This document shows, piece by piece, positions 25,801 to 59,400 of a DNA stretch of 64,000 bases. The notes beneath the pieces were generated by a model. It was not told where the DNA came from and searched no databases. It saw only the letters and a list, made by a program, of their open reading frames with translations. This DNA is from Bugula neritina. Taxonomy: Eukaryota > Animalia > Bryozoa. A program made the translations under genes and the position numbers. Each line of letters opens with the position of its first letter. The stretch's first letter is position 1. The stretch lies in assembly GCA_964035545.1 (NCBI GenBank), contig OZ037765.1:9682698-9746697 (forward strand), written 5' to 3'.

Positions 25801-28800
25801 GACTTCTTTGTGCTAGATGCTGACTTGGAACTAAAACACATTAATGAAAATATATCAACATTTTAACAGACTAGCTGATCACAACTTGGGTCTAGTCAAG
25901 TTGAAAATCACAAAAAGTGCCAACCTTTTAGGGGCTTTAAAGACAACTTCGGTGTCAAGATACTCCATAATAGCCGACATATTGCCTTTAAATCCTCCAG
26001 TCATGTAGAACTCTCCACCTTCCTTAGCAGCAGACTCTCTATTGGTGTTGCCTTTCGACTGAGCTATCTCCCAAAATTTATTTACAAACTTTTCATAGAA
26101 GCCTTGAGCTTTAGGATAAATAGGAGGAAGCAGTGCAGATGTGGTAAGGGTGGGGACACTTCCTTTTGAACTGCTACAAGCATATCAATATGTGGTTTAT
26201 ATCAACACAGGAAGATTCATACACTGGAAACATAAAAAATATATTAAAATTATTGCTTCCGAAAGCTATCTTAATACAGGCTTAGAGAATTAACATACTT
26301 TTTTTACTCAAGTTCAACATCTTGCAACACAGATAAACAAATGCATTACTAGGTGCTGTGTTCTAATGATATCAAAAACCTGGAAATTGTAGAAGTGAGA
26401 CAGGACTGTTCTAATCAGGATACAAGTTTTCAGCATCAATATTATAACTAATTCACCTTTTTTTAGATTTCTTTTTATCCACAGCTGGTGAAGAAGTAGG
26501 ACTGGGGGTTCGCTTCCTTTTATTGCCTTTTTTCTTTTCCCTCTTTTCCTCCATACTATTCAATATATCTTCAGGAGTCACTTTCGTCCTGTCTCCATTC
26601 CCTTTACCTTTCTTACCAGATGCCTATCATACAAGTCATAAGAATAGTTCAACAGAAAAAAACAACAACGTAGGATTTGTCAACAGTATTGATGTTCCAA
26701 CCAGAAATGCATTCCTATAATTCAACAAGAACTTTTATTCTTGGAATTTAAAAATATAAAAAAAAATCAGCAATGAACAAATTCAGCTGCATACCTCATC
26801 TATAAGATAATCTTCTTCATTCAACCATTCATTATAGATGTCCAAATGCTGCAACCATCTAGCATCAACCTACAAGCAACAGTAACCCTAGAAGTCCCCA
26901 TTAAACTATTGGAAGAAATGAAGAAACAAAACACAGCACTTATGGTTGAAATATCCCACAAAAGGTACGTGAAACTTACCTCCCACGCACCACCTGGATC
27001 ATATTTGTCATCAATTTCCAGGTCAATATATGGCTCTGTAACCCAGGTATCATAACTATCCGGTGTATACCACCAATGTAGCATAGTATTTCTCTCTCTT
27101 TTGAAAACAGGTCTTATATAATTATCTAAAAAAAACACCACATTCATACCTAATGAAACCAGCTAATTCAGAACTGCCACAGAACCAGAGTCCTGCAATT
27201 ACTGATAGAATCCTGATGGTCCGCAGTCATTAAGCAAAATTTCATTAAAAATAAAACTACTTCAGAAAAAAATTAAAATTTATTGGGCTTATTTAAGGAG
27301 TGAAAAACTGAGTGTAACATGTACACCAAACAACTTTTAATATTTCATTGGTTAGCTAATAGAGCTTACCAACTCCCCAGTGTCTCAAACTTGATGGCTT
27401 TCCGACTGAATTGAAAAATTGAAAAAGAGTTTAGAAATGGATCACTGGCAATATAGATAATTCAAATAACATTATTAGAATCAATTTGTAGCAGTTACTT
27501 TAGTCAACAATTTATATAAAATAACAGCATAGCAATGCAGGCAGATAAAGTATTCAGTGCAACCACCTTCAAACTGGCTTACTGGGGTTCGGGATTCACT
27601 CAACTCTCACTGATTCACCGAACTCTCACTGATACACCCGACACTTGGTTTGTACTGTGTGAACATTTCAGCTGCTCATAATTACTATAAAAAACCTCCA
27701 CATCTTGGCAAATTGCACTGAGATAGTAATATATACACATACAACACAAGATAGTAAAATAAAATACACACGGGCAGCATCATTGCTCGCTGTGTCTGGA
27801 ATTGGGTACACAATGTGTGTGGCGTCGTCTTCAGAACTAACCAATACACCTTGATGTCTTTTTACTATATCCTTGAGTTGGGCTGAGAGCTCTTCGTTCA
27901 CATCCTTTTGTATAAATATCTACAAAAGTCACATAGATGCATAGAAGACACAATCCTGACAAAAGCCACATAGATGCAGATGAATTTTTTACCTTACATC
28001 AGGGATGCAAGACGGTTGATCAATGCGAAGCAGATCAAAAGCTATAAATTTAGATGGGATGCCTTTCCAAAACTCAACACTTGCAAGAATTTAATCATTA
28101 GCCTGGCACACCATGCTAGAGAAATACCCTTAGCTGCTAGAGTAACACCCTGAGCTGCTAGAGAGTCAGTTTCTAGAGGATAGAGCACTATTTCACTTAG
28201 CAGACTAAAACCAGTTAACAAAATTATCTATCAGACACTATCAATAATCACTCTGATCTAATCAAGATTCATCCAAATTTAGTACTTCCTAGTGTAAATA
28301 CATGCACACGTCAACCAACACACTTGTTAGGTTAATAATGCAGCGCGTACCTGAGGAGTGGGCAAAAATTCTTGAGAACTTTGTTGAAGACTTTTTTCTA
28401 TTTGAAGAAACATTTCAACATTTCTGTCCACTCTTGATGGGTTAGGAAAATCAAATCGCCTCCTGAAAAAAAAGCAAAATATATTGAGCCTTGAAATTAT
28501 TCACAGCATTGGAGTTTGAGAACATTGCTGCAAAACAAAATATAACAGAAAACATACCAGCCTTGCTCAGTTTTAAACTTATAGACTGCTGCTAATACAT
28601 GGCAAAGAGAACCTCCGGACTTGAAATCCATGAATAAGGATATCTACAAGGAAACATGTAGTGCTTATGGCAGGCTTCGAACTATTAGGTGCCAGTACAC
28701 AGTGCAATAATTTGGTGCTACACGCACGCACGCTTATTAGCAACCAAAAGTAGTTTTAACAAGAGTGGAAAACTTAAATGAACTAGAACTTGTTCGACAT

Positions 28801-29733
28801 AGTTATGAATAAAAATGTAGACTTGTAGACACTCACAGGTAGTTTAGTTAGCGGGGCATTGTTCACTTTTCTTCCAAAATGTTCCTCTTGAAACTGGAGA
28901 AGGGAGACAACCAGACTAGCCAAGTTTTTGTTAGTAATTGGCTCTCCAGTTTGAATGTACTGAAAATGCATCATAAACAAATTGAACATTTGAAACTGAA
29001 ATTAAAGTTAGTATAAGAAAAAAAAATGTTAGTCTACATAAATGATTATGCAAATATCTTAACCACAACCAAACGCTGTAAGCAAGTTGCCATTTTATTT
29101 ATGATCCAACACTTCTACGTTTGCTAAATTCAATAATCAGTTCCAAAATTGAAGAATAACTTTATCAGACAGACAAAATAATTGCCAAATAGTCATAGTG
29201 ATTCCACCATTTTCAAAAATATAAACTTTATTGATAGTATAATGAATGATAAGATGTCCTAATTTAATTACTCATCATTGATAGTTAAAAATATTATTGT
29301 GAAAAACAATGAAAGAAAAACAGTCAAATACGACTTTTAGTTTTAATTGAAATATACCAGAATGACAATTACTAATTATTATAAATATTAATAATATTCC
29401 TTCTGATATTGATAATGATTATAATCACCATAAATTAATTCAAATTTGAAGTATTAAACTCGGAGACAGATATTGATAGCGAATATCATTGTCATTATGA
29501 TTATAATCGCTATCTCAAACTCAATGTCAAACCCCATCTGTCTCTGATGCTTCAAATTTAAATTAATTTAGTGGTACAAAAGATCGTTGAAGTTTTACTA
29601 ATAATTTTAATTTTATTACCTTTTTGCAGTTTCTTGTTAACCAACTCCTTACACTATCAAATTGGGAGACGGTTTCCGCTGATTCAAAGTACCTTTGATT
29701 AGGGCTGCCATCATCTTTTTTTATGAGCACCAT
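19802..29733 (-). CDS. SMARCC2: SWI/SNF (BAF) complex subunit SMARCC1/2 (BAF155/170, moira); multi-exon
   Basis: ATG at 29733 ([32 protein letters not shown]). N-terminal module ([23 protein letters not shown]), SWIRM ([12 protein letters not shown]; [16 protein letters not shown]), SANT ([23 protein letters not shown]; [21 protein letters not shown]), coiled coil ([31 protein letters not shown]) and a Pro/Gln/Met-rich tail to the stop at 19802-19804. Probably co-ortholog of SMARCC1 and SMARCC2. Confidence 0.96.
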
Positions 29734-30357: not shown

Positions 30358-33300
30358 ATGGATTCATCGCTAGCGGTCAGTATAAGTACTTATAGTTATA
30401 CTTATACTACACTTGAAGTTGAACTTAAACTTAAAGTTAAACTTAATATTATATTTATACTTATAGTTATACTACTTAATCTTATACTTTAACTTATAGT
30501 TACAGAGTTAGACTATCGATAGTTCCTTTGAAATTGAATCGTTCGCTTTCAGTTCGTGTTTCAAATTTAAACTTAATCTAAATTGAAAGTGAGACCAAAG
30601 TCCACATTTATGAAAATATCGATATTCTTATTCTAAGTAACCTTTACCTATGGGCTATGAGTATGAGTATGATTTTTGATGTGTTAACTTGTCAGTGTAT
30701 AAATCTTAGAAATCATTAACTTTAAGTTTAAGTTATAGTTATAGTTGTTGGCAGCGGCTCATTTAACTTTAAGTTTGCATTTGCTTTGTTAATGTTATTG
30801 ACAAAAGTTTATGAGTGCTATGAATCCAACCTTGGTTATGTGAGCCTACTTGCAACAACTGTTAAAATTCATACAATAGTTTGTTCAAATGCTTCTCAGT
30901 TTGTCTTTCTTGTTCAAAATTGATGTTATAATGCATACTAAATATATTTAATTTGTTTTCCTATAGGAACTATCACATGCTTGTAGCCTGTTTTTTTATT
31001 TTTAATATATGTGTGAAAATAATTATAGTGTAAATATTTATTTAAGTATTTATTTTTTCAAGTCCTGCTAATACTGCTTTATGAAATAGGCTACCAAGTG
31101 TTCACGGTACAACTTCTGTAACATAAAAACCATTTTCAAAATTTGCAGTTTGTATTTAAAAATATGCAATACAGTGTTTCTTTACTTAACATAATACATT
31201 TAGTAGCAGCTCAAAACACAAAATACAACAACTTGCTAGGAGATCCCCAACTTGTTAGGTATTTGAAATATTTATAACAATTAGATAATTTTGTTTTTAT
31301 CCTATTTTTATAAACAACTTTGACTTTTAATTTGAAAAGTCACTTAAAATATTGTCAGTTCATATTTGAATAGGTTTGAATGAACTTCTTGCTTTTCTCA
31401 ACTTGAATCATACTTGAGTGTTTTTCCAAACAATAAATGGACTGAAAGTTTCTAGCTACTAATTCAACTTGCTTTAAATACAACTCTGTTTTGATGTATA
31501 ATACTGCCTCACTACACGTGCTGTAAGAATAAGTATCGTTAGTTACTCATAGTTTAGCTCAATTTTCATTTTGGCTTGTGTTATTTTATAGGATCCAACA
31601 CTTTACTCCATCAAGGCAATTTTAGTTATGGATAATGATGGAGCAAGACTAGTCTCTAAGGTAAACTATGTTTTATTAATTTGTTTTTATAAAGACTGAA
31701 GCTTACAAAAAACTTATGTAATACTAAGCATCGTGGGTGTCATAATTTCCTACTTCTTCAAAATCATACCCAACTATCCAAATTGTTTTTTTTTTCAAAT
31801 AAATAGTAATTTTAAATAGATTTTACATGAATAAATTTGGTCATTAATTTGGTATGCTTATCTCTTTGATGTAGTTATTTCAGTTAAAGTTCATAAGGTA
31901 TTTTGTTCGTGACGTATATTATTCTGACAACCTCTGTGAGCAGTAGTACAAACACATGCCTTTTCAATTTCTGAGGTTATATTATGTTTAATTATTTTCA
32001 GTACTTTGACAAGTCATTTCCAACAATTAAAGAACAGAAAACATTTGAAAGAAACCTGTTCAACAAAACACACCGAGCAAATGGTAAGTTGTAATACGCA
32101 TCATTAATGTGCTATTAATGATGTGCATTCTGTATTTTAATATTCATTTGTTTTTTATACAGCGACTTTTGTCTCTTGTCTGTAGGATAAGTAGATGTCA
32201 CTTGTTATTAATAGTTTTGTCAGATAAGAGTCTTAACTAGCTTGAAACCAATTGGTACCTTTTTTATTCTATCTAAAACTCAAAATCAGTCAGTTTTCTT
32301 ATTTGACTGCACACCAGATATTTTCAACTAACATTTTTTTATATATGATATATTTCAGCTTATCACGGTCAGCAGCACAAAATTTTCATTGTTTTATTGA
32401 TTATTTTACTTTATGGTCTTAAGTAATTCTTGAAACATTGTATGCAGATTAAACCCTAGTGTACATTATTGCGTAACATCTTTCTACAAACTGCTTATTT
32501 ATTTTTAGCTGAGATAGTGATGTTTGAGGGTCTAACTTGTGTCTATAGAAGTAGTGTTGATTTATTCTTTTATGTGGTTGGAAGCTCCAATGAAAACGAG
32601 GTAATTTTTTCATCAATTTAATTTATCTTCACATTGGTTTCTTGTCATTATTGTATTTCAACTCTGTCCATATTTATTTCAATATTTAATGATTCCTGGT
32701 TTCAGTTAATATAATCCAAATATGTGAGCAGGAACCACCAATTATTTTACAAACAGATAACCAATATATATATTTATGGTTCAGATTTGGAGTTGTCTGT
32801 AAATATCACTATCCATACAGACTGTTAGATCAGGACTGTTTATACTTGTTTATATTATGCATGCCTCTGTTGATGGGTATGTTTGGTTTGTAGCTGCTGC
32901 TCATGAGCGTACTAAACTGCTTATTTGACTCTGTCAGTCAAATGCTGCGGAAGAATGTTGAAAAGAAGATGTTGTTGGATAAACTAGACAGTGTATTTTT
33001 AGCCATAGATGAAATATGCGATGGCGGGTAAGGCATAAAGCATTCTACAAGTAAATAGGGACATATTGTATCAAACAAGATTTGATTAGAAAAGCTTCCA
33101 TTGGTCGAGGTTTCATTGCTCAAATTTGTTTACAGTAGAGTTTAGCCCTTAAAGTTTAGATTTGATATCTTTCAATATACCGCACTGCTGGGTAGGATGG
33201 TTCAGCTTGGAGCAAAGTATTGTAATACTATGTTTCTCTAGATCCTCAGCAATACCCACTAACTGTCTTTAGTTGTACATATACATTTTATTTCAGCATT

Positions 33301-33821
33301 TTACTGGAATCAGATCCCAACACAGTAGTATCTAGGGCAGCTGTAAAACAAGATGACATACCACTGGGCGAGCAAACTGTCTCACAGGTATGGTACAGCT
33401 GTCTAGCTAATCTCTATTTATTTACAAGTTCCATATTTTTGATATACTTATCAAGCCAAACAAAATAGTTTCTTAGTTAACAGTAGATTTGAAAAATAGT
33501 TCTTTAGTTTTTTGCAAGCCTGTTCACGGTGAGTTACCAGATATTTTTCAAGTCTATAGATATTTAATTATTTTGTTTCAAATATACCTTGTGCCTTTGC
33601 TATGTTTGTGGCTAATTATATGTATTATTTTTTACATTCACTGCAAGCATTTGACATGGTGCATTTTCTCTTGCAAGCACGTGTTGCATATCAACAAAGA
33701 GCTGTTATAGTGACACTTGTACTAGTTAAGAAAATGTTGCCCGCAGACTGAGCTGTAATTATTTTTCATGCAGGTTCTGAGTATAGCCAAGGAACAGATC
33801 GGATGGTCAATACTCAAGTGA
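30358..33821 (+). CDS. COPZ1: Coatomer subunit zeta; multi-exon
   Basis: Exons read manually: 30358-30375 (MDSSLA), 31592-31660 ([23 protein letters not shown]), ~32002-32083 ([27 protein letters not shown]), ~32509-32600 ([30 protein letters not shown]), ~32894-33028 ([25 protein letters not shown]...AIDEICDG), ~33297-33387 ([13 protein letters not shown]...EQTVSQ), 33774-33821 ([15 protein letters not shown]). Collinear with recalled human COPZ1. AATAAA at ~33895. Missed by the ORF track. Confidence 0.95.
30380..30790. repeat. Degenerate hexamer tracts in COPZ1 intron 1
   Basis: tatagt tatact ... tgaagt tgaact taaact taaagt taaact; tatgag tatgag; ttaagt ttaagt tatagt tatagt. Confidence 0.75.
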
Positions 33822-34375
33822 AACCTACCAACATTTTTTAATCTGACTGTGTATAAAAGCTATGGCTGTATTAGTAGTTTCAGTAGTTTTTTTCAATAAA
33901 CTATTAATATTGTATGTAAACACTGTTTACTGTGGTATATAATCTATGTGACCTAATACCTAATGTTAGTCAAGTATTTATTTGTTACTTTTTCTCTATC
34001 TTCGATGTATTACAAATTGAAATAATGTTCATAATAAAATATATATATATGACACAACCAGTCTGTTAGGTCCTTACATAACCAACTCAGTTGTTGATGA
34101 CCATTTTTGAAGAACTGGTACAGCTTTGTCATTTTGTTTCAAACTAGAGGGCGTATATTTCAAGTGGCACTCCATCACTATCTGGTACCCGCCTCTAATT
34201 GTGCTTTCAAGTGGTCATAAACTACTCAAATGGTACTTCATCAGATTTTCTGTGATTTAATGTTAGTCTGCTCACAGAATTTTGAGTGAGTTGGGGCTGG
34301 TTGTAGATTAACATAGCAAGTTTTTTCTCACTTCGAATGTCCATATAGCAAGGTTGAAACAGAAATCAGCCCAAT

Positions 34376-35719
34376 ATGCCGACTCATATTAACTATTCGG
34401 AGTTTATCAACAGTGACAGAAGTTTTCTTGTACCTGGTCTTCAACGAAAAGTTACTATCCGGACATTTGTTATTGCCACCTTGACTGCGGTATTCTGTAC
34501 CACAGCCATAGCGTGCAGTATAGCTCTTATGGTAGCGCATGGGGAAACTAGGACTACAACAACTCGAGTTGATATTGCAGAAGTTTGCACTACCCAAGCT
34601 TGTTTCTCCTCCACTGCTTTAATAGTTGCATTCAGGAATAATGACACCAACCCTTGTGATAACTTCTATCAGTATGCTTGTGGTAAGTATGATATAATAA
34701 TGGATAATAATGAATGCACTCAAGAGCAATACTGCCTAGTTGTTACTCACAGTTGACTCATTGCTAGTGCTATAAGTTTCACCTGAATAAATTGGTGACT
34801 CCAGCCTTTATTTGCCACATTATTTCTATTTGCTAAAACCTCTACTTGTTTTGAAATAAAACTCTTGCTTTGCATTCACCTTGATTACTACTACAAAAGT
34901 TGACTTTACCGTTTTCAAAGTTTCAGTACTTATAAGCTTCTACAGACTTAAACATTTCGTTATTCTATTGGCTCCATCAATTGTGGCAAAGCCTAATTAT
35001 GTAGTTCTGTATGATATGTGTAATACTTACCTAGCTGTAACACCAAGTGGTTTTGTAGGAGGCTGGAATAATATATTTCCGAAATCGTCTCTTCATTCTG
35101 ATGAAAGAGAGAGAACAATATTTCATAAATTAGAGGAGAATGCAGAAAAGAACATAGAAAAGGTTTTACTTCAACCGGCAGCTGGTAATGCCCCTTCATA
35201 TGAGAAGAAAATAAAGCAGTTTTATGCAACATGCATTGATGATTTCAGTGAGTATAAACTAATTTCTTGCATACATTTTTTCATGTAACTTGAAACCAAG
35301 TAGTATTGTAAATATATTTATTTTTGAAAGTGCCTTTACTATTCATATATGCGATTTTAGTATTTGAACATATTTCAGTTGTAATTAGTATATCTGTAAT
35401 AAATTTAATATATTACATGGCCATTGTGGCATACACTTAGAAAGCCTATATTCATGCTGACATTTCCTAGACACTACTGCTTTACTTGATGCATTCATGT
35501 AACTTTTTATTTTCAGCCATTTCCAGCCAAGGTGGCAAGCCTTTTATTGATCAAATAATAAGCGATTCTTTCGGATGGAATGCACTGCCTGGCTGGAATG
35601 AAGAAACATATGACCTGACAAAGGCAATGAAAAAGGTGCATTCCACTTTCTGGCAACCATCCCTCTTCAATATTCAGATATCAACAGACTGGGAAAACAG
35701 GTCAAAGAATGTCATTGAG
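34376..35719 (+). CDS. M13 (neprilysin/ECE-like) peptidase, alternative N-terminal module A (3 exons, 233 codons)
   Basis: Exons 34376-34682, 35059-35247 and 35517-35719, all GT-AG and in frame. They encode a cytosolic tail, a type II TM helix (FVIATLTAVFCTTAIACSIALMVA), CTTQAC...NPCDNFYQYACGGW and FYATC, ending ...KNVIE at a phase-0 donor (GAG|GTAAAC). Confidence 0.85.
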
Positions 35720-36763
35720 GTAAACATAGCAAGTAATAAGAGACTATTCAGGTTTTGCCATAACAATTAACTGAGTTGAACCCTGCCAAATGTGTTGTAC
35801 TAATGGTGTTACTATTTTTGATAATCTCTCCCCACTGTTCCAACCAAAGGTATTAACACATACAACAAGTCCAACGTTTTAAACTCTGGTCACCCTGTCA
35901 TGTACTATATATTTCCACTGCATGAGAATGCTACTTCTCAGATTGAAATTTCTTTAGGGTTATTTTGTTCCATACTTCTTGTACTTGACAATTTAATGCT
36001 TATTACAATTATCCTTACAGCATACATGCATATATTGGTTCTATTTTCAAATTACTGCAGTGGTATTTAAGCTATAATACTTATTTGGTATATGAGTATA
36101 TCACATAATAATTATAAAATAATGTAAGATAAAAAGTAGAATTTTCACCTCTCCTCTCAACTTTATTAAGCATACATTGTGATTTGCTTGATATATCGTG
36201 GGTAGCTTAAGAAAGTTTCAAAAGAATGACTTCATCTCCAATTTTATACCGTAGTTTATTTGTGATATTATGTTTACTTGGCTACAACTATCTAAATCAA
36301 AGCACTAGATGTAAAGCTCGTAATGATCCATTAGTACATCAATCAATCAACCCTTTACAATAACTAGAAGCAAGTTTGTAGAAATCGGACTCTTTTCTAC
36401 TTGTGCAGACGAATAGTTTTGATCCTGGCACATATAACTGAAGTGGTCTATCCATATTTTTATAGCAGTGTTGCAATAAATCACCACTCTTGGTGAATTG
36501 CTGATAGTGGCAAAATATTCACTTAGCATTAAAACATACAAGTGCCATTGGGGGGAGTTGTTACACGATGATAACTTCAACAGAAGCCACTTGTGATAAT
36601 GGAGGTGCAATCTATTTGCTGGCACAAGATAATTCCTACATTTTATTGCTGCTGGTTTAATGAGATTAGTCGAGTATAGTTATTAAAGGGAACAGTCTGT
36701 TTCGAGCTGGAGAGCTGTTGAGGAGCTTGTAATATAAAGTTAGTGCGACACCTCAACACAAAT

Positions 36764-39700
36764 ATGTCGGACGGCGTTTTCTCTACAGCAAAATCTAGTG
36801 AAAAGTACACTATAGGAAAGTTGCAGCTCATGAAAACTGAGCTTATTCTCTGTGTTATTGGTTTGATAAGCTTGATCATACTAATAACAGTTGCTATACT
36901 TTTGGGAGCCGGCATTGGAAGCCAAGATAAAGAAATAGAAGAGACATCAATCAACATTGTTGTACCAAAAGAGTGTCTTGAGCCACAGTGTCTTGAAGCT
37001 AGCAGCACATTAGTGTTGCTTCGTAACACAAGTGTTGACCCTTGCAATAATTTTTATCAATATGCCTGCTCAAGTAAAATATGGTCGACAGAAAGATTAA
37101 AGCCAGACGAAAGAGAGTTTTCTACGTTGCATCAGCTTGAAGAAGAGAATGAAGAAAGAGTGAGAAATGCTTTGGGTTCACCAATCAGAAGGTCTGTTGA
37201 ATGGTCTGCAGAGTTAAGGATGAAGAAGTTTTATCAGTCTTGTTTGAACACATACGGCAATTCAGCAGAGGGTCCAAAAGATTTTATGGAAAAAATACTC
37301 ACCCCTGCTGGTGGTTGGTACATGATCAACACTATGGACGAACAGCAGTATGATATCACTAATGCGCTCACAAAAGTGCACAGTAACTTTTGGCTCACGA
37401 GCTTATTTAGTGTAACAGTAGCTCGTGATGACCTTTATAATCAACGAAATATACTTGAGGTTAGTGTATATGAAGTCGACTGTCAACTATTCTATAGTTT
37501 TCAATATTTTTTTAAAGCTGTTTATAAAAATATCATTTCTTACAAATAGATCGGACTTGGTGGGCTAACTCTCAGATGGTGGGATTACATTGGTACAACC
37601 TCAAAACACCAAAAGGTAGGCCATGTAGCTTATAACTTTATAGTTCTCCATAAAATAAAGTTGCAGCAGAATAATTAAGTTCTAATTAAAATTATTGCTT
37701 CCAATAAACATAGAAATAATGGTTATTCTAAACTTGGGTTAAATAATTTCTTGGGCTAGGTATTTATTATGAAACATTTCTTGTATAAGTTTAAACAAAC
37801 ATATTTTTAAAATATAATAAACCATATACATATGCCTTCAAAAGCATGCAGTAAATATTTATATCATATTAACATTATCCATAAAGTGAACATGTATTTC
37901 CTATATCATAGCATATAATTGTCACTTATATTCCTTTTGCTATTACACTATTGCAAAAATTGAAGATATAAACAATTTTTTTTAAATATTTATAAACTCA
38001 TGCACTCACGCATAAATATTTTCTCCCAAATATTTATATTTATTCATTTATTACAAACCCAGTTTCTACCCTTGTAGACTAATTTGTGCAAGTGATCTTT
38101 AGTTGCTTTAAAAACTATTTTAATGAGTAGGTAGCTAGCAACTCCAATGAACTGTTTCTTTTTGTCAATTTGCAAGACATGTTATGGGTTTACGGTGTTT
38201 CATGCTTAGCTGTTTGAAGACACAAAGAAATTCATGCGAGATGTTAGTAAACTTTTGATAAGAGACTCTGGTGAAGTTAGCGATGAAGCTCAAATTTCCC
38301 GATTATCTAATGAGTTTGCAGAAGATGTGTTTAACTTTGAGCAACAACTTGCCAACGTAAGTAAAGGTTATTATTCAAATTTTTAGAATTAAGTCTAAAT
38401 ACATATCTTAGAAAAGTTTCTATAGTAAGTAGATGAAAATAAACGGTCTTTTCATCTATGTATTTACAGGATAAACTGCTTTCATATTGTTGAGAATAAA
38501 ATTATTGTAGGATAGAACACTGCAAAATAGTATACCAGTAAGATGCGTGCTAAAAATCACACATCACATATTTATATTTATTTTTCTACTTAATCTAGTT
38601 TTATAACCTTATACACTTACAGATTCTATTTTATAATTTTAGTTTCACTTTAATGAGAAAAAATATGCATCAATAATTTGCTGCAGGATTTTAAATTTGT
38701 ATTAAAAAACCTGCAACACCCTTGCATGGTGCAATTTTAGTCTTTCAGCATAAAAAAACTTATGACAACAATCAATTTTGTCAATAAATTAGGAGTTATG
38801 TTCTTTTTCTCTTCAGACAACTTGGTATACTTTGCCATCTGATGACCCTCATGCCCATGAAAACCGTGTGACTGTCAGCAAGATGAATGATTTAGCTGAT
38901 GAAGTTAGTAAGATTTAATTTGCTACATCATAACAATGTGTACATTTCATAATTCAGTGTTTTTTTGTTTCACCTTATTCTACCCGTGCACAGGTTATTT
39001 ACACGTGGTCTCTAGAATTAGACAAATAAAGAAATAGGAAACAGTTCTATATACACATGATGTAATAATGTTTAAACTATATATTACTATGCAATATTTA
39101 AAGCAAACTTTCCTAAAAAACTTGCTTCCCCTGCGTGAAGTTTCCTTAGCTATTTAGTAATATAGAATAATGAGTTCGTTTTTTAATTTTTTGTACCTAC
39201 CAGAATAATTTCTGATGGCTAGCCTTTGTGTAATGTATAGCAATATGCTGATAATATATAGCAATACGGTAGTGATAAATGGTGTTCGTAAATTTTTTAT
39301 ACATTGCAGTTTGATTGGGAAGAAATCATAACAGAAATGTTTGACACAGCAAGGGTCAATGGAAATACTAAGATTGTTCTGTTGGAAAAAGAGTTCTTGG
39401 GGAAACTGAATGAACTAATCAAGAATTTACCTGAAAAGAAAAAGTTTGTATTACACCACTTTCTGCAAACTACTTTAGAAGTCTAATTCAATATTATATT
39501 TGTTGCAATTAAAAATTGATCTGTGATCTGGAATTGGTAGTTTTAAATTGAAATATGAGCTCTGCAATAACATATGTTATTGTATAAAAAAGGCCATAGC
39601 CTTTTCTGACTTAGTTAAAAAAACACAAAATCAGCATTTTGCTTTTATTTTTCAAGCTTATCATGAAGTTTCTAAAAGAATAATTTTTAAGCTGAAAGGT

Positions 39701-42700
39701 CTAAAATTTAAATTTTTGCTCATAGACTATAAAAAACTCTATTTGTGTCCTGTACAATCTTCTCCTATATTGTCTTCTATATGACATATATGATGTTTTA
39801 ATTGAATAATATATTGCAAATGTTCGGCAATTGAACCTTCTACATACATGGTACACAAAATATTTGAACATATAGTACTTTACATGCAATATGATACTTT
39901 ACATTTACAGAACGCTAAACAATTACTTTACATGGCGACTGATGCTGGGCTTTGTGACAGATCTGGGTTGGGAGTACGTGCACGCTAACAGAGAATTCTG
40001 GGTAGCCAGGACTGGTCTTGCAGAGTTTACAGGCATTCCAAAGTACTGCTTCAATAAAGTTAAATACCACTTCAGTGAAGGGCTTGGTGCTCTATACATT
40101 AGGGATCACCTTTTAACCAATGACAAGGCTACAGTAAGTTTTCACTTAATTATAAATGCTCTGTCATGGCTACCACATTGGTCTTATTATACTACTAAAC
40201 CTTCAATATTATAACTTAGTTTCCTATATTTGGTATATATGAAATTTACTAGATATTACTATTTTACATACTTTGATGGTTTTATTTTTCAGATACTGTG
40301 TCCAACTTATTGAAAAAGCAAATTTTCAACCAAATTAAATCAACTATTCCAAAATTTATTAGTAATTATAAACAAAAGTATATTTTCATGCAGGTTGATA
40401 CTTTCTAGTAATGGGTTCTGATATTCTGATTATATTACTCTTAAAGATGTTTACATTATATGCTAAGAAGTGTCTGTAAGGCTATTGATTTAATTTAAAC
40501 TGAACAATGCTCATGTGTATTACATTGCAATAATGCCAAAATAAACCTGGGCATACGGTCTCAAATATAATGTAATGTAATTATGCATGTTGAATTCTAA
40601 AAACCAGCCATAATATTCGAATAAGACAGATTGTTTACAAATTTAATAAATCTCACAGATAGATAACCTGGTGGCATATCTCAAAAGAGGTCTGCAAGAT
40701 AGACTCAACAAACTTACATGGATGGAAGAAAAATCTAGAAGAATTGCAATAGAAAAAGTAAAACTGATAGTTGACAAAGTGGGCTACCCTTCATGGATGA
40801 CAGACAATGATGTTATTGACCAGCAGTATTCCGAGGTACAGAGTATAATTTACCATGTATTTTTGTATCACACACTGGGTGTTCACAAGACCTAGCTTAT
40901 AAGTAGGATGAAGTCAAGGCATTCAAGGCAGTTCATGGTGTAAACAAACCTCTTCCAAGTCCAAGTTGAAAAATAATTTCCCCCACTGAGATTCGAACCC
41001 GAGACCTCTGGCTTGTAAGCAAGTGTGCTAAGCATTACCCCACGGAACCACTGGGTAAACTCTTCACTACACAAGTCAAGCCAATAAATCATTTACATAT
41101 GCTCCAACTATTTTCAATTGAATTACAATTATGCTTGATCAAGTATATACATAAAATGCATAATATTGTAAAGATTTCTATGTAATTAAGAAAAATTTAG
41201 CGGCTTAAATAAAAAATGAACTTGTAGCTCAATGTCTAGCTATTTTGTGATTAATACTAATTTATGATTAATTTTGCAGTTTCAGCTCACATTTGCAACA
41301 TTTAGGAGCAGTAGTGAAGATATTGAGATAGCTAATTTCTTTAATCTTATTGCTAAATTTTGGTTTGAAGCGAGGGTTAAAATTCCCTCGAGAACATAAC
41401 TTCTTATGCTACATTTCTAATCTAAAACTCGGGCTTTTCTCAATTTCTCCATTATTGCACCTAACTTCATGATGCAAAAAGTTTATCTCGTAAGTTTCTG
41501 TTAGTGCTAAAAACTTAGTTATGTAATATAACAGTCTGATATGGTAAGATGTCAAAGTCTTGTAGCATGCCATATTTTTCAAGTACTTGTGTCAGTGTGA
41601 CATCTACCCAACTTTGGTATTTAGAGTACGTTTTGTGTTTTCAGTAAAGATCACTCAAGAAATTGCAACTACATTATTTTTTATGCCGAAGAAATTTGTT
41701 TAAATGATAATTTAAATTATAATTTAGAAATTCATGTAAAACCACCTATACCTGTAACATGTTTTATGCTAACATAGGTGAAAATTGAAGAAGATCAGTA
41801 TCTACAAAATCTAATAGAGATTGCTGCTTTTGAGAAAGAGAAGGCCAATCAGCTGTTGATGAAGGGAGAAGACACAAGCAGATGGAGACTGAATGTAAGT
41901 TAGGGCTGTATAATTCCAAGTACAAATATTTGCATAAATAAAACACTTATTTGTTTTAATTTAATTTTTGCTTACAGCTGTAAAATATTTTTAGGTTTGG
42001 GAAACTGGTGGTGGTTATGATCAATGGTGGAATGAAATCTTAATTACGGCTGGGTTGTTGCAGTGGCCTATCTATGCCAGGAATTTCCCTAAATATTATA
42101 ACTTTGGCGCTTTAGGTATCACAGTAGGACACGAACTCATACACGCTGTGGATGAAATTGGTATGTTCAATTATTACACCAATATTTACCGTGACTCGTG
42201 TGGTCGACACAGAAATTAGTGCGGCATTTGATAAATGTATTGCTGCCATATATACCACTGGTAAAAAATAATTTAAGCTTGGAGTTGTGATACTACATAA
42301 AATATTAGACTGTGAATTATTTATCTTTGGCTAGTTAGTAGCATTCAAATACACTTTATCTTTGTTCTGTTTGTTAGCAAGTTACTATTTTGATAAAATA
42401 TATAGCATTCAATTTTTAATCTAATATGCTCAGTTTAGGAAGGTGATATTATGCTATTCACTCGAGCTTTTAATGCATGGAGTGCAGCACTAAAGAGTGT
42501 GTGCCAAGTTGCTGCACAGCTGGGCTTTTTTTTAAAGTGAATCAATTTTCGACTTTATGCAATAGTAACGTAGCCATTTCAATAGCTTATCTTGATGTGT
42601 TAGAAAATTGTGTAAGAGTAAAGAAAAAGTTATAAGAATTGAAAGTGAAAAAAATTTCTAAATAACATTTTGATCAACCAACAACAACAGTTCATTTTTT

Positions 42701-44182
42701 TACATTTTTCATTCACAATAAGCTTGAAAATTTAATGATGGTAATAAAAACATTTTTATATCTTGTGCATATTATTTAGATGCAAAAAATCTGACATAAA
42801 TGAGTTCTTTAGGACTTTGCCATGAACTTTTTTATATGTTTAGGAATTTTTGTAGGAATTATGTGCTATTAAATCTATAGTTTAGCAACCGTGTCCCTAA
42901 TAATGTAGCACTTTTTGACTGCTTTACTGAAAAATTGACTCACAAATGTGGTTATGCCATTTATATAAACAGATGCTATGTATTTATGAAGAAATGTCAA
43001 ATAGAAATATAGTATTGTAGTAAATGATTACATTTTTAATACGCTTTATTTGATCTAACAGGTGGTTATTATCTACCAAATGGCACATATTTTGATTGGT
43101 GGACTACTAACACTACTACCAATTACAACAAACGAAGAGCTTGTTTAGAAAACCTTGACCTCAAAGCTGGACCTTACCAAGCTACTCCAGACTCTGAAAT
43201 TAGACTTGTAGGTTTGATCAAGCCTTGCTTATTAGATACTTATTTGTTTATGATGAGATGAAGCGACATTTGGTTGTGCTAGCTCTGGTACATTTGGATA
43301 TATTATTTTTTAGATAAGAATTGATGGTACCTATGCTGCAAGAGAATTGACAGCAGAGATGGCTGCTATAAGAATTGCATACAATGTTAGTTTGTTTGTC
43401 TAACTTGTATTTATTAAAGGGACACAACATTTTATATCTTTAGATTAAGTATTTTACCACCAGCCAACTTGCTATGTTATTTAAGAAACTGTGTAAACCA
43501 GAAAACACTGCAGGCAAATTTAAATTAGACTAAACCTGTTAACCATGGCAACTAGTTCATAAGTTGATAACCAGCATTCATTCACTCTTTAAAATAAAAA
43601 GTGCCACAGTTATATAATCTTTATTAATGGCTTTTAATCTTAATCTAGTGAATGAACAAATGAAAGGCCAGATTTTGAATTCCATGCAAATATTGGTAGG
43701 CTTATAAAGACTGGGTAGCTGACAACTCCGAAGAGAAAAGAGCACCAGGTGTTGGGCTCACTAATGAGCAGACTATGTTCCTAGCATACGCCCAAACCCA
43801 GTGCTTTGTAAGACGTGATGACTATTCTATAAGCAGAGCCGAGAGACAAATAATACCAGAAGACATTCGGTAGGTTTTAAAAAAAACAAAATAATATTAA
43901 TTATTCCCACTCTGCCTTAACCAAGCAGCATGCTTTTTAATTAAGATTTGTCATGAATTTATTTCTTTGTATAGTAATTAGGATTGTTAATCTAATACAA
44001 ACATAAACTTATCAAAGCAACTATATACCCATGCTAGGTATTAAAATTGGTATCATTATAGAAATTTCATTTGATGTTTTAGGTTGAATGCAGCTTTGGC
44101 TCATACACCAGAGTTTGTGAAGGCATTCTCCTGTGATGCAACTACCAACATGCATGCTACAGACAAATGTGAAGTGTTCTAA
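36764..44182 (+). CDS. M13 (neprilysin/ECE-like) metallopeptidase: N-terminal module B (single exon 36764-37459, 232 codons) plus shared downstream exons
   Basis: Module B: TM helix, CLEPQC...DPCNNFYQYAC, FYQSC, ending ...RNILE|GTTAGT. Downstream exons: 37550-37615, 38210-38356, 38817-38903, ~39310-39443, 39911-40133, ~40659-40835, ~41778-41894, ~41995-42160 (NFGALGITVGHELIHAVD, HExxH at 42130-42144), 43062-43207, 43314-43385, 43700-43869, 44083-44182 (EFVKAFSC...KCEVF*). Confidence 0.92.
40888..41057 (-). mobile_element. tRNA-derived SINE-like element in an M13 gene intron
   Basis: The minus strand reads ...CCGTGGGGTAATGCTTAGCACACTTGCTTACAAGCCAGAGGTCTCGGGTTCGAATCTCAGTGGGGG... with A-box-like and B-box (GGTTCGAATC) motifs followed by a non-tRNA body. 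Boundaries approximate. Confidence 0.6.
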
Positions 44183-44746
44183 TGGCTGATCAAAGATTCT
44201 AGTTCTACGATTGACATTTTTGTCATGTTTTTTATGCATAATACTCCAGTTTATAATATATTCATTGACAATCTGTATCAATTATCATAATCTATAGCAA
44301 TAACTTCTCGTTATTTGCAAGCAAAGTATGATCATATTTATATTATTATTATTCTTTTACTTATTACTAACTGTAAATTTTTAATAAATATGCAAATGGA
44401 ATTATATATGACTTTTATAATCAACTAATTAGAGCCAACAAATGTTAAAATAAAATAATTTAACTCCTTTTATTTGGGTACTGAACCAAATTTTTAAACA
44501 GCAGACAAAAAAACTGTGAAAATTCAGACTAGCATACAATCTAAATTAGGCTGCTGAGCAGTAATAATATTTGAAATACTATTAAATTTTATTTCTATAT
44601 GTTCAAAGATGTTAAAAAAGCAAGCTGATTTTTCTACCTGGTATATCTGAAAAATGCATATAAAATCAAGATAATAGTTTACAGCATTTACAAGGTGAAT
44701 TAAATAATATGAAAATAATGTTAGCCATAGCCAAATGTCTAAAAAT

Positions 44747-47700
44747 TCAATATGACCGGGCATCTGGGTTAATATAGAAGCAGATATAGCCATCTTTGAC
44801 AAGACGGCGAATAAGATCGGGTGACGTCTTCATATCATCATATGCATCCACCAACTTCTTTCTAAAGTCAACAACTTCTCTTACTTTTGGGATGTTACTA
44901 TTTGTTGAGTCTAGAAATACACCAAAATATGTTAGCAATATTATAGATTCACCATTCACCGATCTCTTTACAGCTTGGAGTATACGCATAATGTTACAAT
45001 TTTTCAGATTTTCAATAAAACATATTACGTATGCAATGATGAAAGAACAAGCAACATTCAAATATGAACTGTAATCAATGAGTGCCTAAAACTGTGGTGC
45101 TTTGCTTAATTTTCAACTGTAGGACAGCAAATACAAGAGAATGCTTGTCAATATGTAAAACCTTAGGCACATTCTGAAAAACAAGTTGGTTTTGAACCCA
45201 ACTCCCAAATACATTGTTGACATTGCAATACCTTTTACTAATTAGTGTGTATAACTGAAAATATGATAAAACCAAATAGCTTGATGGACCAGCTTGTTCA
45301 AATAATTATAAATTCAACTAAAAAGTTTTCAAGCTGACATAAACGTCTGCAAATTACCTTCTCTATCAGCCATACTGTCGAAAAACAACCAGCGGGCTTT
45401 TTTGGTTGTGTTTGAAGCCACGAAAGTAACATAATGAGACGTCTCGATACAGAGAACAGCGGCTAGTCTGAGCTCACACTTTGCATCCTGTATGCATTCC
45501 TCGTCAGAATTCTCACCTCTCTCTGCCCCCCTAGATCTCCTGTCCTGTTTGACCGTACGGTTAATATGACGAGGTTTATGGTGGTTTCGCTGCTCATGCT
45601 GGTGATACTAAGATGAAGAGAGTATAAGCTATGCTTCTTAACATCAAACTTTATGCAGTCATTCATAGCAACAGAATCTGATCAGAACTGCAGAAAATAG
45701 CTCTTTACAGCTATTATTTAAATGTTTAATAATAAAATACCATATCATATAAAATGCAATTAATTATACAATAGTTTATTGAGTGTATTTGAATTTAAAG
45801 TGGAGACACCTGAAATATTAAAATGATTAGAAAAATGACAAAAATAAAGAAGATTTCTTACCCCGAATGCGCAATCTTCACAGAACGATGCAAGAGATAT
45901 TTTGTTCTGCTCTTTATAGCATTCATAACACTCATGGGCTGCTGGCTTTGAGCAGACAACACATTTCTGCTTGGCTAAAAGACAACGGAGTTATTGTTCC
46001 AATGCTAGAAAATTTGAAATCTTACTAACTGCACTTACTTATTTGTTGTCTTACTACTATCAGTAGCTGAAAAATAAATTCTGAGTTTCACAAATTTACT
46101 TCAAGTGAAGACCACAGTGTGTTCAGATTACTATTCATAAACCATTTAACTATTGTTAATTTGTGTACATACTTCCACTTAGCAAATCTGTAATGTCTAG
46201 CTCTGGACTGGGGAACACCATGTCGTACATTTTGAAATCTTTTCCAAACCGTGGCAAATGAACTATCAAGTATGGCGGAATCTGTAAAGTTAAAATTAAG
46301 AATATTTGTATATATAACAACTTCTGAGTAACTTTGCCATGCAACCAATTATGCATTAGCAGCAAAGTACAGGCAGTTTGCGATCTTTCATTTTTGAAGT
46401 ATTGAAAGTTAATGCTAGTATATCCAGTATCCACTATCTGTGTTTGCAGCATCACATTATTACTGTATAAATAACTGTTCAAGTTGTAGGCTTGTATGCT
46501 GATTAAGTTTAAATCTAAACTACAGCAACAGTTAGACCCAGTTATTGAGTATTCATAATCGTTATTAATGATTTTCTGAGCCTTTACATTTGAAGAAACT
46601 TTCATATTGACATCAGTGATTCAGCAGGTATAACTATATGTTGATCCATTTAATACAGGAAAAACAGCTGGCTTCTTATTTGGTGTGTGTTTTGGCATAA
46701 AAAATGTTGGAACCGTTACAAAATGTTTGAAAAAAAACCTTGTATAGTACAGATACTATTCTCAACCCAAATTAATCTCTTTAATTAATTTTTAAAATTT
46801 TGAAATTAGATTTTGCACCTTTCCACTTATTAAGTTGTCAATACTTTACTGCATAGAATATGCAATAAAAACGCTAAAAAATTAAAAATAAAATTGGCAT
46901 TAAACTTATCAAACAGAATTGTAAAGCTTCAAAAAGTTACCAGTGACTACCTCCATTAAACAATGTTATTTGATGTACCTACAGACCAGTCTTTTTTGGA
47001 TAAAAGTATACATACATTCTTTTACCAAGAAAACAATACTATAACAGCTGATGACAATACATATAATATGTCAGGGTGCAATGTGCAATGTAATTAAGCA
47101 CCTTGGCAAATTTGAAAGCTTCCTGTAGACAGTTTCGCTCCAGCAACTCCTGAACTGTAGGAAATTTGAAGCTATAGTCTTTATCAGCCAGTAGATGAAA
47201 AAGGTGTGAATCTGAATCGTTACTACAAACATAAACACACTCATTTAAATGAACTTTTAAAAACAATTGTTGTACATACTTCTGTACATACTTACAAAAA
47301 CTGGTTTTCTGAAATAACTCAGAATATGCAAAGATAAAAACTGTCAGAAGTGAGAGAGTGGTAGGATAAATCTAACCTAAGAAAAATCGGAGGTTCTGCA
47401 TTGAGCACATCTACTAAAAGAAGGTTGAGAAACTCCTCAGGATCTTTTTCCTCTCCTCTCAGACCTTTGACTGATCCAATATCATCAAGTAGGCTTCTGA
47501 GCTGATGCATGGCCAGCTTAGACACTAGTCCATACCTGTATTGGAAGACAGCTGTGGATATCTGTGCATGTGAGAGTATTTGTTATGTTTAAATTCTAAT
47601 AACAATTTAGCTTTTTGAAATTTTGCTTTCTCAAATTATTTTTAAAAAAGTAACTTGAAAAAGAGTAATAGTATATGCCTAATTTGAACATACAAAACAA

Positions 47701-50700
47701 AAACATTTATTAGTTGATTAATTACATGGTATAAATTTTCACGTCTTTAACCACTTACTTTCTCAGCGGATTTACAATCTGAGTCCGCAAAATATCCTTT
47801 ACTTTTCTCTTTGTTTCAGGACTTACTAAATGTTCAACCGGTGTTTGTGATTGGGCATTATTGGCTTTTTCTTTTTCACTAGCGCTTACTAAGTTTCCAA
47901 CTTGAACCAAATCATCAAAGATTGTAAGATAAGCAAACATGGCAAATATGCTAGCATCCATGTAGCACGAATTTTGGTCACCCTGTACCCCTTTCCATGG
48001 GCCAAGATACTGTCCAATATGACTCGGAGGCTTTACATGTTCTTCAACAGAGTTTTCCAATTCTTCTAATTTCTCACCCTCTTCAGGTAAAATAAATCCA
48101 GGTGGTCTGAACATAAATGGAGGCACGATAGTTGTCATGTAGGTTCCATCCATTTGGAGCTCAACTTTACCACGAAAGATTAAATCTTCATCTTTAATGT
48201 CTATAACAAAACCCAGTCATGTACTAGTTTTTCAATGAAATAAGAATGAAAAGCATAAACACTGTAATTTGACTGTTAATTATGATGTCATAAATACAAT
48301 ATCAGAATTTCTAAATTGCCTAAATTTAGAAAATGGTAAAAGAAAGGGTTTAAACTTTAGTGCATTATATCATCACTAGTAATACAAACTCATGCTAAGT
48401 AAAAAATTAGAGTAGTAGATTCAATTCTCTACTCTGTCCCTAAGACCTTGTTTAATTTTTTTAAATATTTTACTGTATTATGTCACATTGCATTATTGTA
48501 TTTTTATTGTATTTATTGTTACATGGACAACATGAGAATCTGTCAAAAACACTAAAAAATCATAGAAATAAAAATAATAAAATACGAGCTAAATTACAAT
48601 TGAGTAGAATATAATTTCAGATTCATAACTTACATCTTGTTGACACATTTGAACTCGCAGATGGGTTTTTAGCCTCAGCCAAGCCACGTTCATAGCCCCT
48701 TATGTACTCTGGATTTTCAGATACTAGTTTACCATCAGCAGCTTTATGGCCCACCAGACCATCGTCATAGCCTGTCCAATAATTGTCTTTATCAATATGT
48801 TTTTGGCTTTCAATCTCTTGCAAATAATCATCACTTCCATGTTTGTATCCTTCTCGATAATAATGATTACTAGATTCAGGTCCCCCCCTTGATGTCTGGA
48901 GAACTTTCCTAGCTTGGTCATAACCATCCCAGTAGTTGTGAATATTTGATTCTGACCAATTACGAGTATAATCTTTATAGTTTCTCTCCCCTTCACCAAA
49001 CCCACGCAAGTATTCTTCTTCAGTAGATGCTGGATAGGGTTTGTAACCTGCATATCGCCGCCAACCATCCAAGTAACCAGTTGAGTACTTCTGTATCCTA
49101 ACCCGCTTTGCCTCTAAAGCACCAACCCCGTACCCTTTCAAATAATTGGGATTGTTAGAAGATTTTGTTGATCGATTTTTACCATCATTATAACCTAGGA
49201 TGTAGTGCTGTTCATTTTCTTGCGCATCGCTATGATAAAAATCCTTGTAGACGTCAGCACCTGTTGTCGTGTCAGTTAGCATGCTATTGGATTGTTGATG
49301 ATGTCCGACTTGGTTATGAAATCTGTTAGCATTTTCTCCTGGGTGAGTGAAATCTGATGCACTGTGTTGCTTGGAAGTTGCATCTAAATGACTTTTTGCG
49401 GTATTAGTGCGTCCAGAAAAGTTAAAATTTATTTGGTTGTTGATTGATGGACCAGCAATGCTTGAGTTATTTATTGATTTGTCTGCAAAGTCAAGAGATT
49501 GCTTTTGGCTGTGCAGCTTAAAATCTTTCGAAGCTCCAAATCGATCAGAGGGCTCGTAGGAGTATTTTGTCTTCGGGCGAGTATCTATTAAAGCAAATAA
49601 ACTATATATGAGCAGAAATAATTTTTGACAATCTAGCTATTTTGCTTGACTTTTATATGACGCAAATTAAATTTATTGGCGCTTGATAGAGTTTCATTTC
49701 AAGTGCCAATTAGAGCTTCTTTTAAGAAAATTACATATTATATTTATTGTCAATCATGTAGAATACCAAGTTTTGAAAATATGAATTGACTCCTTATTTT
49801 ATGTACTTTCTAACTTATGGTATGGCATAATATGAGATTAATTTCCACATTAAATCAAATAAAAATGCAAATGCAATAAATAGCTACAACCATATTGAGA
49901 GAAACAAATTGGAAATACAATTAAATACACTGCTTTACATACCAAGTGTTTTAACAAAATAAAAAATAATTTTAACTAATAATTGGCCAACTCATTAAAA
50001 AATTAGACTTCATGGTTTACCATGTTATGTCTTTTATATACAAAGATGGGCATCTCACATTTCATGATTAAATTTATGTATGAAGAAAGAAACAGACATT
50101 TTGTGTGACGGTTAGTTACCTTTAACTTATGATAACAATACAGATACACCACGAAAATTGCTACTCAACTACTGATGTGCAGTTTCTACATATGTTACCT
50201 TGCTCAGCTCTCTGATGAATTTGTGATGGTGCAACTGGTCTTCCTGAACCAAAGCTTCCTGTAACATGCAATAATAAAATAGAGACCCACACATTCACTA
50301 GAGCAGTAAAACTGGGAACAATTAACAAGCCAGCATAATATTACAATACAAATAAACTACAGTAAAAATAGTTGTACAATCAGTTTTGTTTAATATTGAA
50401 ATAGTATATACAAAACTTTATGCACAAGATGTTTTTAGAGTTTATATTCAAGGCCCTGTTTTAAAAGGTTACTGAATTACTGAGATAGTGCTGAGTCATC
50501 TTGCCTATTAAAATATAATAGCATGACTAAGCATGTGTGTAGATGATGATTAGGTAAGCAATGACTCATAGCATACTGTGAAATACATGTAGTGATTTCT
50601 TCAATGAGCCAACAAAGCAACTTTATTAAAGTAATACATCAAAGTGGCAGTAATCTAATTTGAATAGAACATACCAGAGAAGGAATTGTCAATGCTAGAC

Positions 50701-59367: not shown

Positions 59368-59400
59368 CTGATAAATAGCATTGTTTTTCTTTAAATTTCT

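What the first reader, a model, noticed from the sequence alone, without database searches (positions are those of the whole stretch)
34376..44182. Variable-plus-constant neprilysin-family locus: two paralogous ~232-aa N-terminal modules share one catalytic C-terminus
Seen in the sequence: module A (34376-35719, 699 coding nt) and module B (36764-37459, 696 nt) each encode an ATG, cytosolic tail, TM anchor and the M13 Cys-rich N-terminal ectodomain. They are clearly homologous but very diverged (A LHSDERERTIFHKLEE / B LKPDEREFSTLHQLEE; A KKIKQFYATC / B LRMKKFYQSC; A YDLTKAMKKVHSTFWQPSLF / B YDITNALTKVHSNFWLTSLF). Both stop at the same homologous position with a phase-0 donor (KNVIE| and RNILE|). 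Only one matching downstream exon set exists, starting at 37550 (IGLGGLTL), and I found no C-terminal exons between A and B. Module A has no stops or frameshifts and has intact splice sites despite the divergence. Inference: alternative promoters give two enzymes with different tail, TM and ~175 ectodomain residues on a shared zinc domain, an architecture like UGT1A or clustered protocadherins. Established comparison: mammalian ECE-1 alternative first exons change only the cytosolic tail, so swapping part of the folded ectodomain is unusual.
Basis: partly seen in the sequence, partly recalled or inferred. Interest (0 to 1): 0.88.

Follow-up and report, generated by a model that had tools for sequence, protein, structure and literature searches.

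The report
Neprilysin-like gene with two interchangeable heads
A moss-animal (bryozoan) gene of the neprilysin family makes two membrane proteins with very different front thirds on one shared back part; related genes of a ribbon worm and a bristle worm have the same layout, apparently evolved separately, and the proteins may bind peptides rather than cut them.

Summary
Confirmed. Module A (3 exons, 233 aa) and module B (one intronless exon, 232 aa; ~30% identical) each splice to the same 12 constant exons. RNA contigs carry both joints (35719->37550, 37459->37550); a DNA run lies colinear without them. Both modules are under purifying selection (dN/dS 0.27, 0.12). The A-B-constant layout holds in six bryozoan-type loci down to ~37-42% identity.

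(1) The same two-head layout, switching at the same phase-0 boundary, is in a nemertean (RefSeq isoforms X1/X2) and an annelid (unannotated as such). Trees favour separate duplications of an ancestral ~700-nt intronless first exon.
(2) The swapped part holds the S2'/S1' pocket residues; one is basic in every A and hydrophobic in every B.
(3) 'Two enzymes' is unproven. The zinc ligands are intact here, but Asn542 and His711 equivalents are lost, and the deepest two-head ortholog and all non-bryozoan subfamily members sampled lack HExxH.

Separate promoters are inferred, not shown. The design is known (GCNT2, UGT1A); I found no paper on it for M13 genes. The scan noted this design in other genes of this genome (s1-441597, s1-451012), not this family.

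The parts
34376..34682 (+). Module A exon 1: ATG, cytosolic tail with a Y-x-E-F (YxxPhi-like) motif, TM segment (~aa 31-54), start of ectodomain with Cys71, 76, 94, 102
   Evidence: RNA contigs and joint to 35059; tail motif in four lineages
35059..35247 (+). Module A exon 2: holds the S2'/S1' pocket segment (E120, R121, F124, E128; codons 35109-35135) and Cys161
35517..35719 (+). Module A exon 3, phase-0 donor spliced to 37550
   Evidence: joint in RNA contigs X1 (depth 17.9) and X2 (6.05; one contig runs from this exon through constant exon 4)
35720..36763 (+). A-B spacer: intron for A transcripts and presumed promoter/5' UTR of B; no clear 3' splice site before B's ATG
   Evidence: an RNA contig of X2 begins at 36509 while 35767-36357 is empty; weak
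36619..36648 (+). Short motif shared upstream of B in four lineages; candidate promoter or UTR element (weak, defined after the fact)
   Evidence: pairwise p only about 0.05
36764..37459 (+). Module B: single intronless first exon (tail, TM ~aa 28-46, ectodomain to the same phase-0 boundary); pocket segment E118, F119, L122, E126 (37115-37141)
   Evidence: joint to 37550 in X1 and X3
37550..37615 (+). Constant exon 1, shared acceptor for A and B
38210..41894 (+). Constant exons 2-7: 38210-38356, 38817-38903, 39310-39443, 39911-40133, 40659-40835, 41778-41894
   Evidence: joints up to the start of exon 5 seen in RNA contigs; the rest from homology
41995..42160 (+). Constant exon 8: zinc motif HELIH at 42130-42144; the VNAFY motif is replaced by TGGGY
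43062..43385 (+). Constant exons 9 (43062-43207) and 10 (43314-43385); third zinc ligand Glu at 43344-43346, Asp650 position is Glu
43700..44182 (+). Constant exons 11 (43700-43869) and 12 (44083-44182, stop); His711 position is Ile, Arg717 kept

Best explanation
One gene of a divergent spiralian/amphioxus M13 subfamily with two alternative 5' modules. The ancestral gene had one intronless ~700-nt first exon ending at a phase-0 donor. That exon was duplicated in tandem with its promoter early in bryozoans; the upstream copy (A) later gained two introns. Transcripts that start at A splice A3 to the first constant exon and pass over B, which has no acceptor of its own. Transcripts that start just before B use B as first exon. 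The two type II membrane proteins (768 and 767 aa) share the C-terminal two thirds. They differ in cytosolic tail, anchor and the part of the ectodomain that lines the S2'/S1' pocket, so they most likely differ in site of expression, cell location and the peptides they take in. Whether the bound peptide is cut slowly or only held is open. Shown: exons, both joints, selection, conservation, position of the pocket residues by alignment. Inferred: separate promoters, the splice rule, different ligands and sorting.
For: Both joints in RNA contigs, none in DNA. dN/dS against a ~94% relative: A 0.27 (Fisher p 6e-4), B 0.12 (4e-11), constant part 0.12. Same order and same A intron sites in L023, L020, L027 and Watersipora; A3+B in L022. 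A and B form separate supported clades that are sisters (100/99, 98/92, together 99/99). Single intronless head in Owenia locus a, Gigantopelta, Lingula and L029. 70 of 80 short database hits read through into Val at this boundary, as a GT donor would give. ECE-1 pocket residues R145, W146, F149, S150, W153 (PMC3558449) align inside the module; the W146 position is R/K/R/K in A and F/L/M/F/L in B. A tails keep Y/F-x-E-F.
Against: No start sites: only contigs. The A joint comes from one sample of a ~95% identical relative. In X1 the contig with the B joint runs unspliced back into A3, so it could be an A-started transcript. The pocket assignment rests on sequence alignment at ~27% identity. About 20 columns are class-specific, so one charged/hydrophobic switch could be chance. 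No expression, location or ligand data.
Confidence: 0.72

Rival explanations
1. Both isoforms are ordinary active zinc endopeptidases (neuropeptide-degrading, NEP/ECE-like), and the head swap changes substrate preference.
For: HELIH, the Glu646 and Arg717 equivalents and Asp590 are intact here, in L023 and in Watersipora. The M13 fold is kept: homolog models have pLDDT 85-88, and one matches neprilysin at TM 0.81.
Against: Asn542 is Gly, His711 is Ile, Asp650 is Glu; these residues matter for catalysis (PMC7822871, PMC2259306). L027 keeps both heads but has KQLVH for HExxH. None of the 19 non-bryozoan subfamily rows with residues there has an intact HExxH.
Confidence: 0.35
2. The heads matter only for expression and sorting (two promoters, two tails); the ectodomain differences are drift constrained by folding against the shared part.
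For: The duplicated unit necessarily includes tail, anchor and ectodomain because they sit in one ancestral exon. ECE-1 isoforms differ in location through their tails alone (PMC2567069). Pocket positions other than W146 vary within each class.
Against: Class-specific ectodomain residues are fixed over long branches, including one at an S2' position.
Confidence: 0.3
3. A has no promoter of its own; it is made from read-through or co-transcription with the upstream coatomer-zeta gene, or B from processed A-started transcripts.
For: An RNA contig runs from the spliced last coatomer-zeta exon to A's first donor (33771-34683); X2 covers 33911-34683 at A-like depth. Only 554 nt separate that stop from A's ATG, about 300 nt in L027.
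Against: Contigs merge overlapping transcripts. AATAAA signals lie at 33895 and 34033. The gap is about 3 kb in Watersipora. No loose (leader-like) ends were seen near either ATG.
Confidence: 0.12
4. One ancient duplication in the spiralian ancestor, kept in bryozoans, nemerteans and annelids, rather than three separate events.
For: Same boundary and tandem layout in three phyla; the two Tubulanus heads are not sisters in the tree.
Against: AU tests reject A + Tubulanus distal (p 0.003) and A + Tubulanus distal + Owenia distal (p 0.0001). The Owenia pair are sisters (98/96). The Tubulanus distal intron is at another site and phase. Neighbouring genes differ among phyla. Early gene conversion could hide an old origin.
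Confidence: 0.12
5. A is a truncated dead duplicate or an assembly artefact.
For: None left.
Against: Spliced to the constant exons, under purifying selection, conserved in order across lineages, and an independent assembly (L023) and DNA contigs agree.
Confidence: 0.01

Closest known systems
Vertebrate GCNT2 (IGnT) and UGT2A/UGT1A variable-first-exon clusters (PMC1885805)
   Same: Tandem paralogous large first exons of one reading frame, each spliced to common constant exons. In GCNT2 the variable exon also carries the N-terminal TM segment and conserved Cys of a type II membrane enzyme; in UGT1A it carries the substrate-recognition part.
   Different: Different protein family and phylum; only two heads; heads ~30% identical with no DNA similarity; one head is split by two introns; promoters not mapped; catalysis uncertain.
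Human ECE-1 a-d isoforms (PMC2567069)
   Same: M13 type II membrane protein with alternative N-termini from one gene; tails may set location.
   Different: [quoted passage not shown] Here the anchor and ~175 ectodomain residues with pocket residues are exchanged. The gene belongs to a separate subfamily (~27% identical to ECE-1).
Tubulanus polymorphus XP_074652409.1 / XP_074652410.1 (RefSeq isoforms X1, X2)
   Same: 536 identical C-terminal residues, heads of 232 and 219 aa at 28% identity, same boundary; proximal head intronless, distal head with an intron.
   Different: Automatic annotation only, not described as far as my searches found; different intron site, different neighbours, HExxH broken; probably a separate duplication.
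Neprilysin-like pseudopeptidases such as Drosophila Nepl15 (PMC7822871)
   Same: M13 fold with loss of the Asn542 and His711 equivalents; proposed peptide binding without cleavage.
   Different: This protein keeps all three zinc ligands and the catalytic Glu, is membrane-anchored and has alternative heads.

Membership tests
M13 (neprilysin) family | Peptidase_M13_N and Peptidase_M13 domains | tested here: met
   B 72.5 bits, cut-off 32; constant exon 8 over the PF01431 cut-off
M13 (neprilysin) family | Type II topology: short tail, one TM segment, Cys-rich ectodomain | tested here: met
   hydropathy and Cys pattern; TM helix in homolog models
M13 (neprilysin) family | Neprilysin fold | tested here: met
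   on database homologs only: Tubulanus X1 model matches neprilysin, E 6e-42, TM 0.81; Watersipora A form pLDDT 87.9
Active M13 peptidase | HExxH plus third zinc ligand (Glu646) | tested here: met
   HELIH and Glu664 in B+C numbering; absent in ortholog L027
Active M13 peptidase | VNAFY/NAYY motif with Asn542 | tested here: not met
   TGGGY
Active M13 peptidase | His711 transition-state residue and Asp650 | tested here: not met
   Ile at 711, Glu at 650; Arg717 kept
Active M13 peptidase | Measured peptide cleavage | not testable with these tools
   needs an assay
ECE-1/NEP ortholog | Groups with vertebrate and insect ECE | tested here: not met
   separate spiralian + amphioxus clade in head and constant-part trees; few ECE/NEP rows were included
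Variable-first-exon / constant-exon locus (GCNT2, UGT1A type) | Tandem paralogous 5' modules ending in one phase | tested here: met
Variable-first-exon / constant-exon locus (GCNT2, UGT1A type) | Each module spliced to the same constant exons | tested here: met
Variable-first-exon / constant-exon locus (GCNT2, UGT1A type) | Each module has its own promoter | tested here: inconclusive
   contigs cannot give starts; weak shared motif before B
Variable-first-exon / constant-exon locus (GCNT2, UGT1A type) | Each variable part is one single large exon | tested here: not met
   true of B; A has three exons

The most novel reading that the evidence does not exclude
An undescribed, largely non-catalytic M13 subfamily of spiralians has evolved a variable-head/constant-body gene three times from the same intronless first exon, because that exon carries the sorting tail and the peptide-selecting pocket wall; the isoforms act as peptide sinks, carriers or receptors with different ligands.
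Probability: 0.3. Interest if true: 0.78.

Novelty: new variant of a known kind. Interest (0 to 1): 0.6.

Why it matters
It extends the variable-first-exon design, mostly described in vertebrate glycosyltransferases and adhesion genes, to the neprilysin family. It also gives a case of apparently repeated evolution of one gene layout at one exon boundary in three phyla. The two isoforms are a natural domain-swap experiment on the M13 pocket: two ~30% identical heads must fold on one body. Practical point: annotations miss it (Watersipora lists only A; Owenia splits off the distal head), and the label 'endothelin-converting enzyme' hides a mostly degenerate active site.

Tried and rejected
Misassembly or dead duplicate: rejected.
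A third module, or hidden constant exons between A and B: none found.
The three other M13 loci of this genome show no duplicated head in the stretches fetched; they are diverged, so sensitivity is limited.
A shared upstream exon with mutually exclusive cassettes, or an A+B+C chimera: no such joint in contigs and no conserved acceptor before B; contigs cannot prove absence.
A shared intron between bryozoan A and the Tubulanus distal head: different site and phase.
Bacterial promoter scan: not applicable to an animal, ignored.
Two homolog searches were saturated and gave no full-length protein of this species.
Same-body/different-head pairs among fetched full-length proteins: only Tubulanus.
Littorina 'isoform X2': no locus on record.
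Paper searches found nothing on this layout in M13 genes or on bryozoan neprilysins; the library is incomplete. Run accessions could not be tied to species.
My first constant-exon borders were wrong and were fixed with the RNA joints; likewise two ortholog borders (fixed in 38). The dN/dS rows quoted are only those against L023, which were right.

Full report
1. Observation. The finding is in the sequence as described. Module A has three exons (34376-34682, 35059-35247, 35517-35719; 233 aa). Module B is a single exon (36764-37459; 232 aa). Both end at a phase-0 GT donor at the same homologous residue. They align over their whole length (69 of 245 columns; score 315 against a shuffle maximum of 10), have no DNA similarity, and both match the first 132 positions of Pfam Peptidase_M13_N. 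Twelve constant exons from 37550 to 44182 give 535 aa with canonical splice sites. No constant-type sequence lies between A and B, and no third head is present. The gene lies between a coatomer-zeta gene and a CYLD-like gene. The organism is a bryozoan by homology and synteny with Watersipora subatra; the Bugula neritina complex is my inference from genome size and run labels, not a tool result.

2. Transcript evidence. Contigs of three RNA-labelled runs and one DNA-like run were laid on 33600-39500. The joint 35719->37550 is in X1 and X2 (one sample, a ~95% identical relative); one X2 contig runs from A exon 3 through constant exon 4. The joint 37459->37550 is in X1 and in X3 (another study, 99+% identical). 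Both A-internal joints were seen. X4 shows no joints and lies colinear over the region, and an independent assembly (L023) has the same order. Limits: contigs give no start sites, strand or level; X1 also covers introns; the X1 contig with the B joint runs back unspliced into A3.

3. Selection and conservation. Against L023 (94% aa), dN/dS is 0.27 for A (Fisher p 6e-4), 0.12 for B and 0.12 for the constant part. The order A (three exons, same two intron sites) - B (intronless) - constant exon 1 recurs in L020, L027 and Watersipora, and as A3 - B in the short contig L022, all with open frames and GT-AG sites. L027 and Watersipora share the SMARCC - coatomer-zeta neighbourhood. Orthologous heads are 37-51% identical to the window's, A vs B about 30%. 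In trees, A and B are separate supported clades and sisters, so the duplication predates the split of all bryozoan-type lineages sampled. The species behind L020, L022 and L027 could not be named.

4. Origin. Relatives in an annelid, a gastropod and a brachiopod have one intronless head ending at the same boundary, within the DNA fetched. 70 of 80 short database hits read through into Val there. So B keeps the ancestral exon and A gained introns (inference). A self-contained first exon holding ATG, tail, anchor and a third of the protein, with a phase-0 end, can be duplicated with its promoter and work at once. That appears to have happened more than once. Tubulanus polymorphus (nemertean) has RefSeq isoforms with 536 identical C-terminal residues and heads 28% identical, switching at this boundary. 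Owenia fusiformis (annelid) has two intronless heads (44% identical) in tandem before one constant set; the distal one is annotated as a separate fragment and its splicing is not shown. AU tests reject grouping the distal heads across phyla (p 0.003; p 0.0001), the Owenia pair are sisters, and the Tubulanus intron is at another site. Separate duplications are favoured. Long branches, a 236-column alignment and possible early gene conversion leave a single old origin possible, and the two Tubulanus heads do not group together.

5. What the swap changes. In ECE-1 the S2' residues R145, W146, S150, W153 and the S1' residue F149 line the pocket (PMC3558449); the matching neprilysin residues R102, F106, R110 shape specificity (PMC4121237). 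This segment lies inside the variable head: A has E120, R121, F124, H125, E128 and B has E118, F119, L122, H123, E126. The W146 position is basic in all four A lineages and hydrophobic in all five B lineages. It is one of about 20 class-specific columns, so this is suggestive only. A tails keep Y/F-x-E-F in four lineages, resembling a YxxPhi sorting signal (my own knowledge); the B tail of this species lacks it. Models of the Watersipora A form and the Tubulanus proximal form fold with confidence, and the latter matches neprilysin.

6. Is it an enzyme? Here HExxH, the Glu646 and Arg717 equivalents are intact, but VNAFY is TGGGY, His711 is Ile and Asp650 is Glu. These residues matter for binding and catalysis (PMC2259306; PMC7822871). 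None of the non-bryozoan subfamily members sampled has an intact HExxH, and L027, which keeps both heads, has KQLVH. The two-head layout therefore survives without catalysis. I put ordinary peptidase activity at about 35%, and weak or no activity with peptide binding at the rest.

7. Mechanism. Most likely two promoters. A-started transcripts splice A3 to 37550 because B lacks an acceptor and is not defined as an internal exon; B-started transcripts use B's donor as first exon, as in UGT1A-type loci (inference). Weak support for a start before B: an X2 contig beginning at 36509 with the upstream spacer empty, and a short shared motif 115-145 nt before the ATG that occurs once in the genome but was defined after the fact. 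A's 5' end is tangled with the coatomer-zeta 3' UTR in the contigs.

8. Comparison and verdict. It works like GCNT2/UGT1A (PMC1885805) and unlike ECE-1, whose isoforms differ only in the tail (PMC2567069). It is an M13 family member by domains and fold, not an ECE-1/NEP ortholog, and not shown to be an active peptidase. The design is known, is already implicit in one RefSeq annotation, and was noted by this scan in other genes of the same genome (s1-441597, s1-451012; not rechecked). I found no description for M13 genes. New variant of a known kind; interest 0.6, carried by the RNA support, the depth of conservation, the recurrence in three phyla and the pocket link.

9. Method notes. Database searches used single exons by reference or proteins returned by the tools. 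The joined A+C and B+C models were not sent to any search or folding tool; that joined step was left out. Joined translations were used only inside local scripts for alignment, trees and comparison with already fetched sequences.

Noticed in passing
window 33771-34683: An RNA contig runs from the spliced last exon of the coatomer-zeta gene (stop about 33822) without a break into module A exon 1; AATAAA at 33895 and 34033 and ten upstream ATGs lie in between. Overlapping UTRs or read-through.
   Followed up: partly
window 36619-36648: Short motif shared upstream of module B in four lineages and found once in the genome; marginal statistics.
   Followed up: partly
L032:9974-13525 (Watersipora subatra): The listed RefSeq model holds only the A form, appears to start 9 codons late, and leaves out the intact B exon at 12821-13525.
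   Followed up: partly
L032:38776-45779: A second, tandem M13 gene in Watersipora with a B-type head only, so whole-gene duplication also occurred.
   Followed up: partly
L037:8671-10789 (Owenia fusiformis): Two tandem intronless heads before one constant set; the distal one is annotated as a separate 269-aa fragment.
   Followed up: partly
L027:8560-8770: The deepest two-head ortholog has KQLVH in place of HExxH, while Bugula-like and Watersipora copies have the full motif: either repeated loss in the subfamily or regain in one bryozoan branch.
   Followed up: partly
G000:C3:5.27-5.29 Mb, C3:31.01-31.02 Mb, C6:14.92-14.94 Mb: Three other M13 genes in this genome; no duplicated head seen in the stretches fetched.
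   Followed up: partly
window 1-19000 (+), 19800-29000 (-), 30360-33822 (+), 44700-49700 (-), 57200-59400 (+): Neighbours by translation: KMT2C/D-like SET-domain gene, SMARCC-like gene, coatomer zeta, CYLD-like deubiquitinase, eIF3M-like gene. SMARCC - coatomer zeta - M13 - CYLD order is kept in L027.
   Followed up: no
window 52480-53780 and 61670-61940: Low-complexity short-period repeats giving spurious open frames.
   Followed up: no
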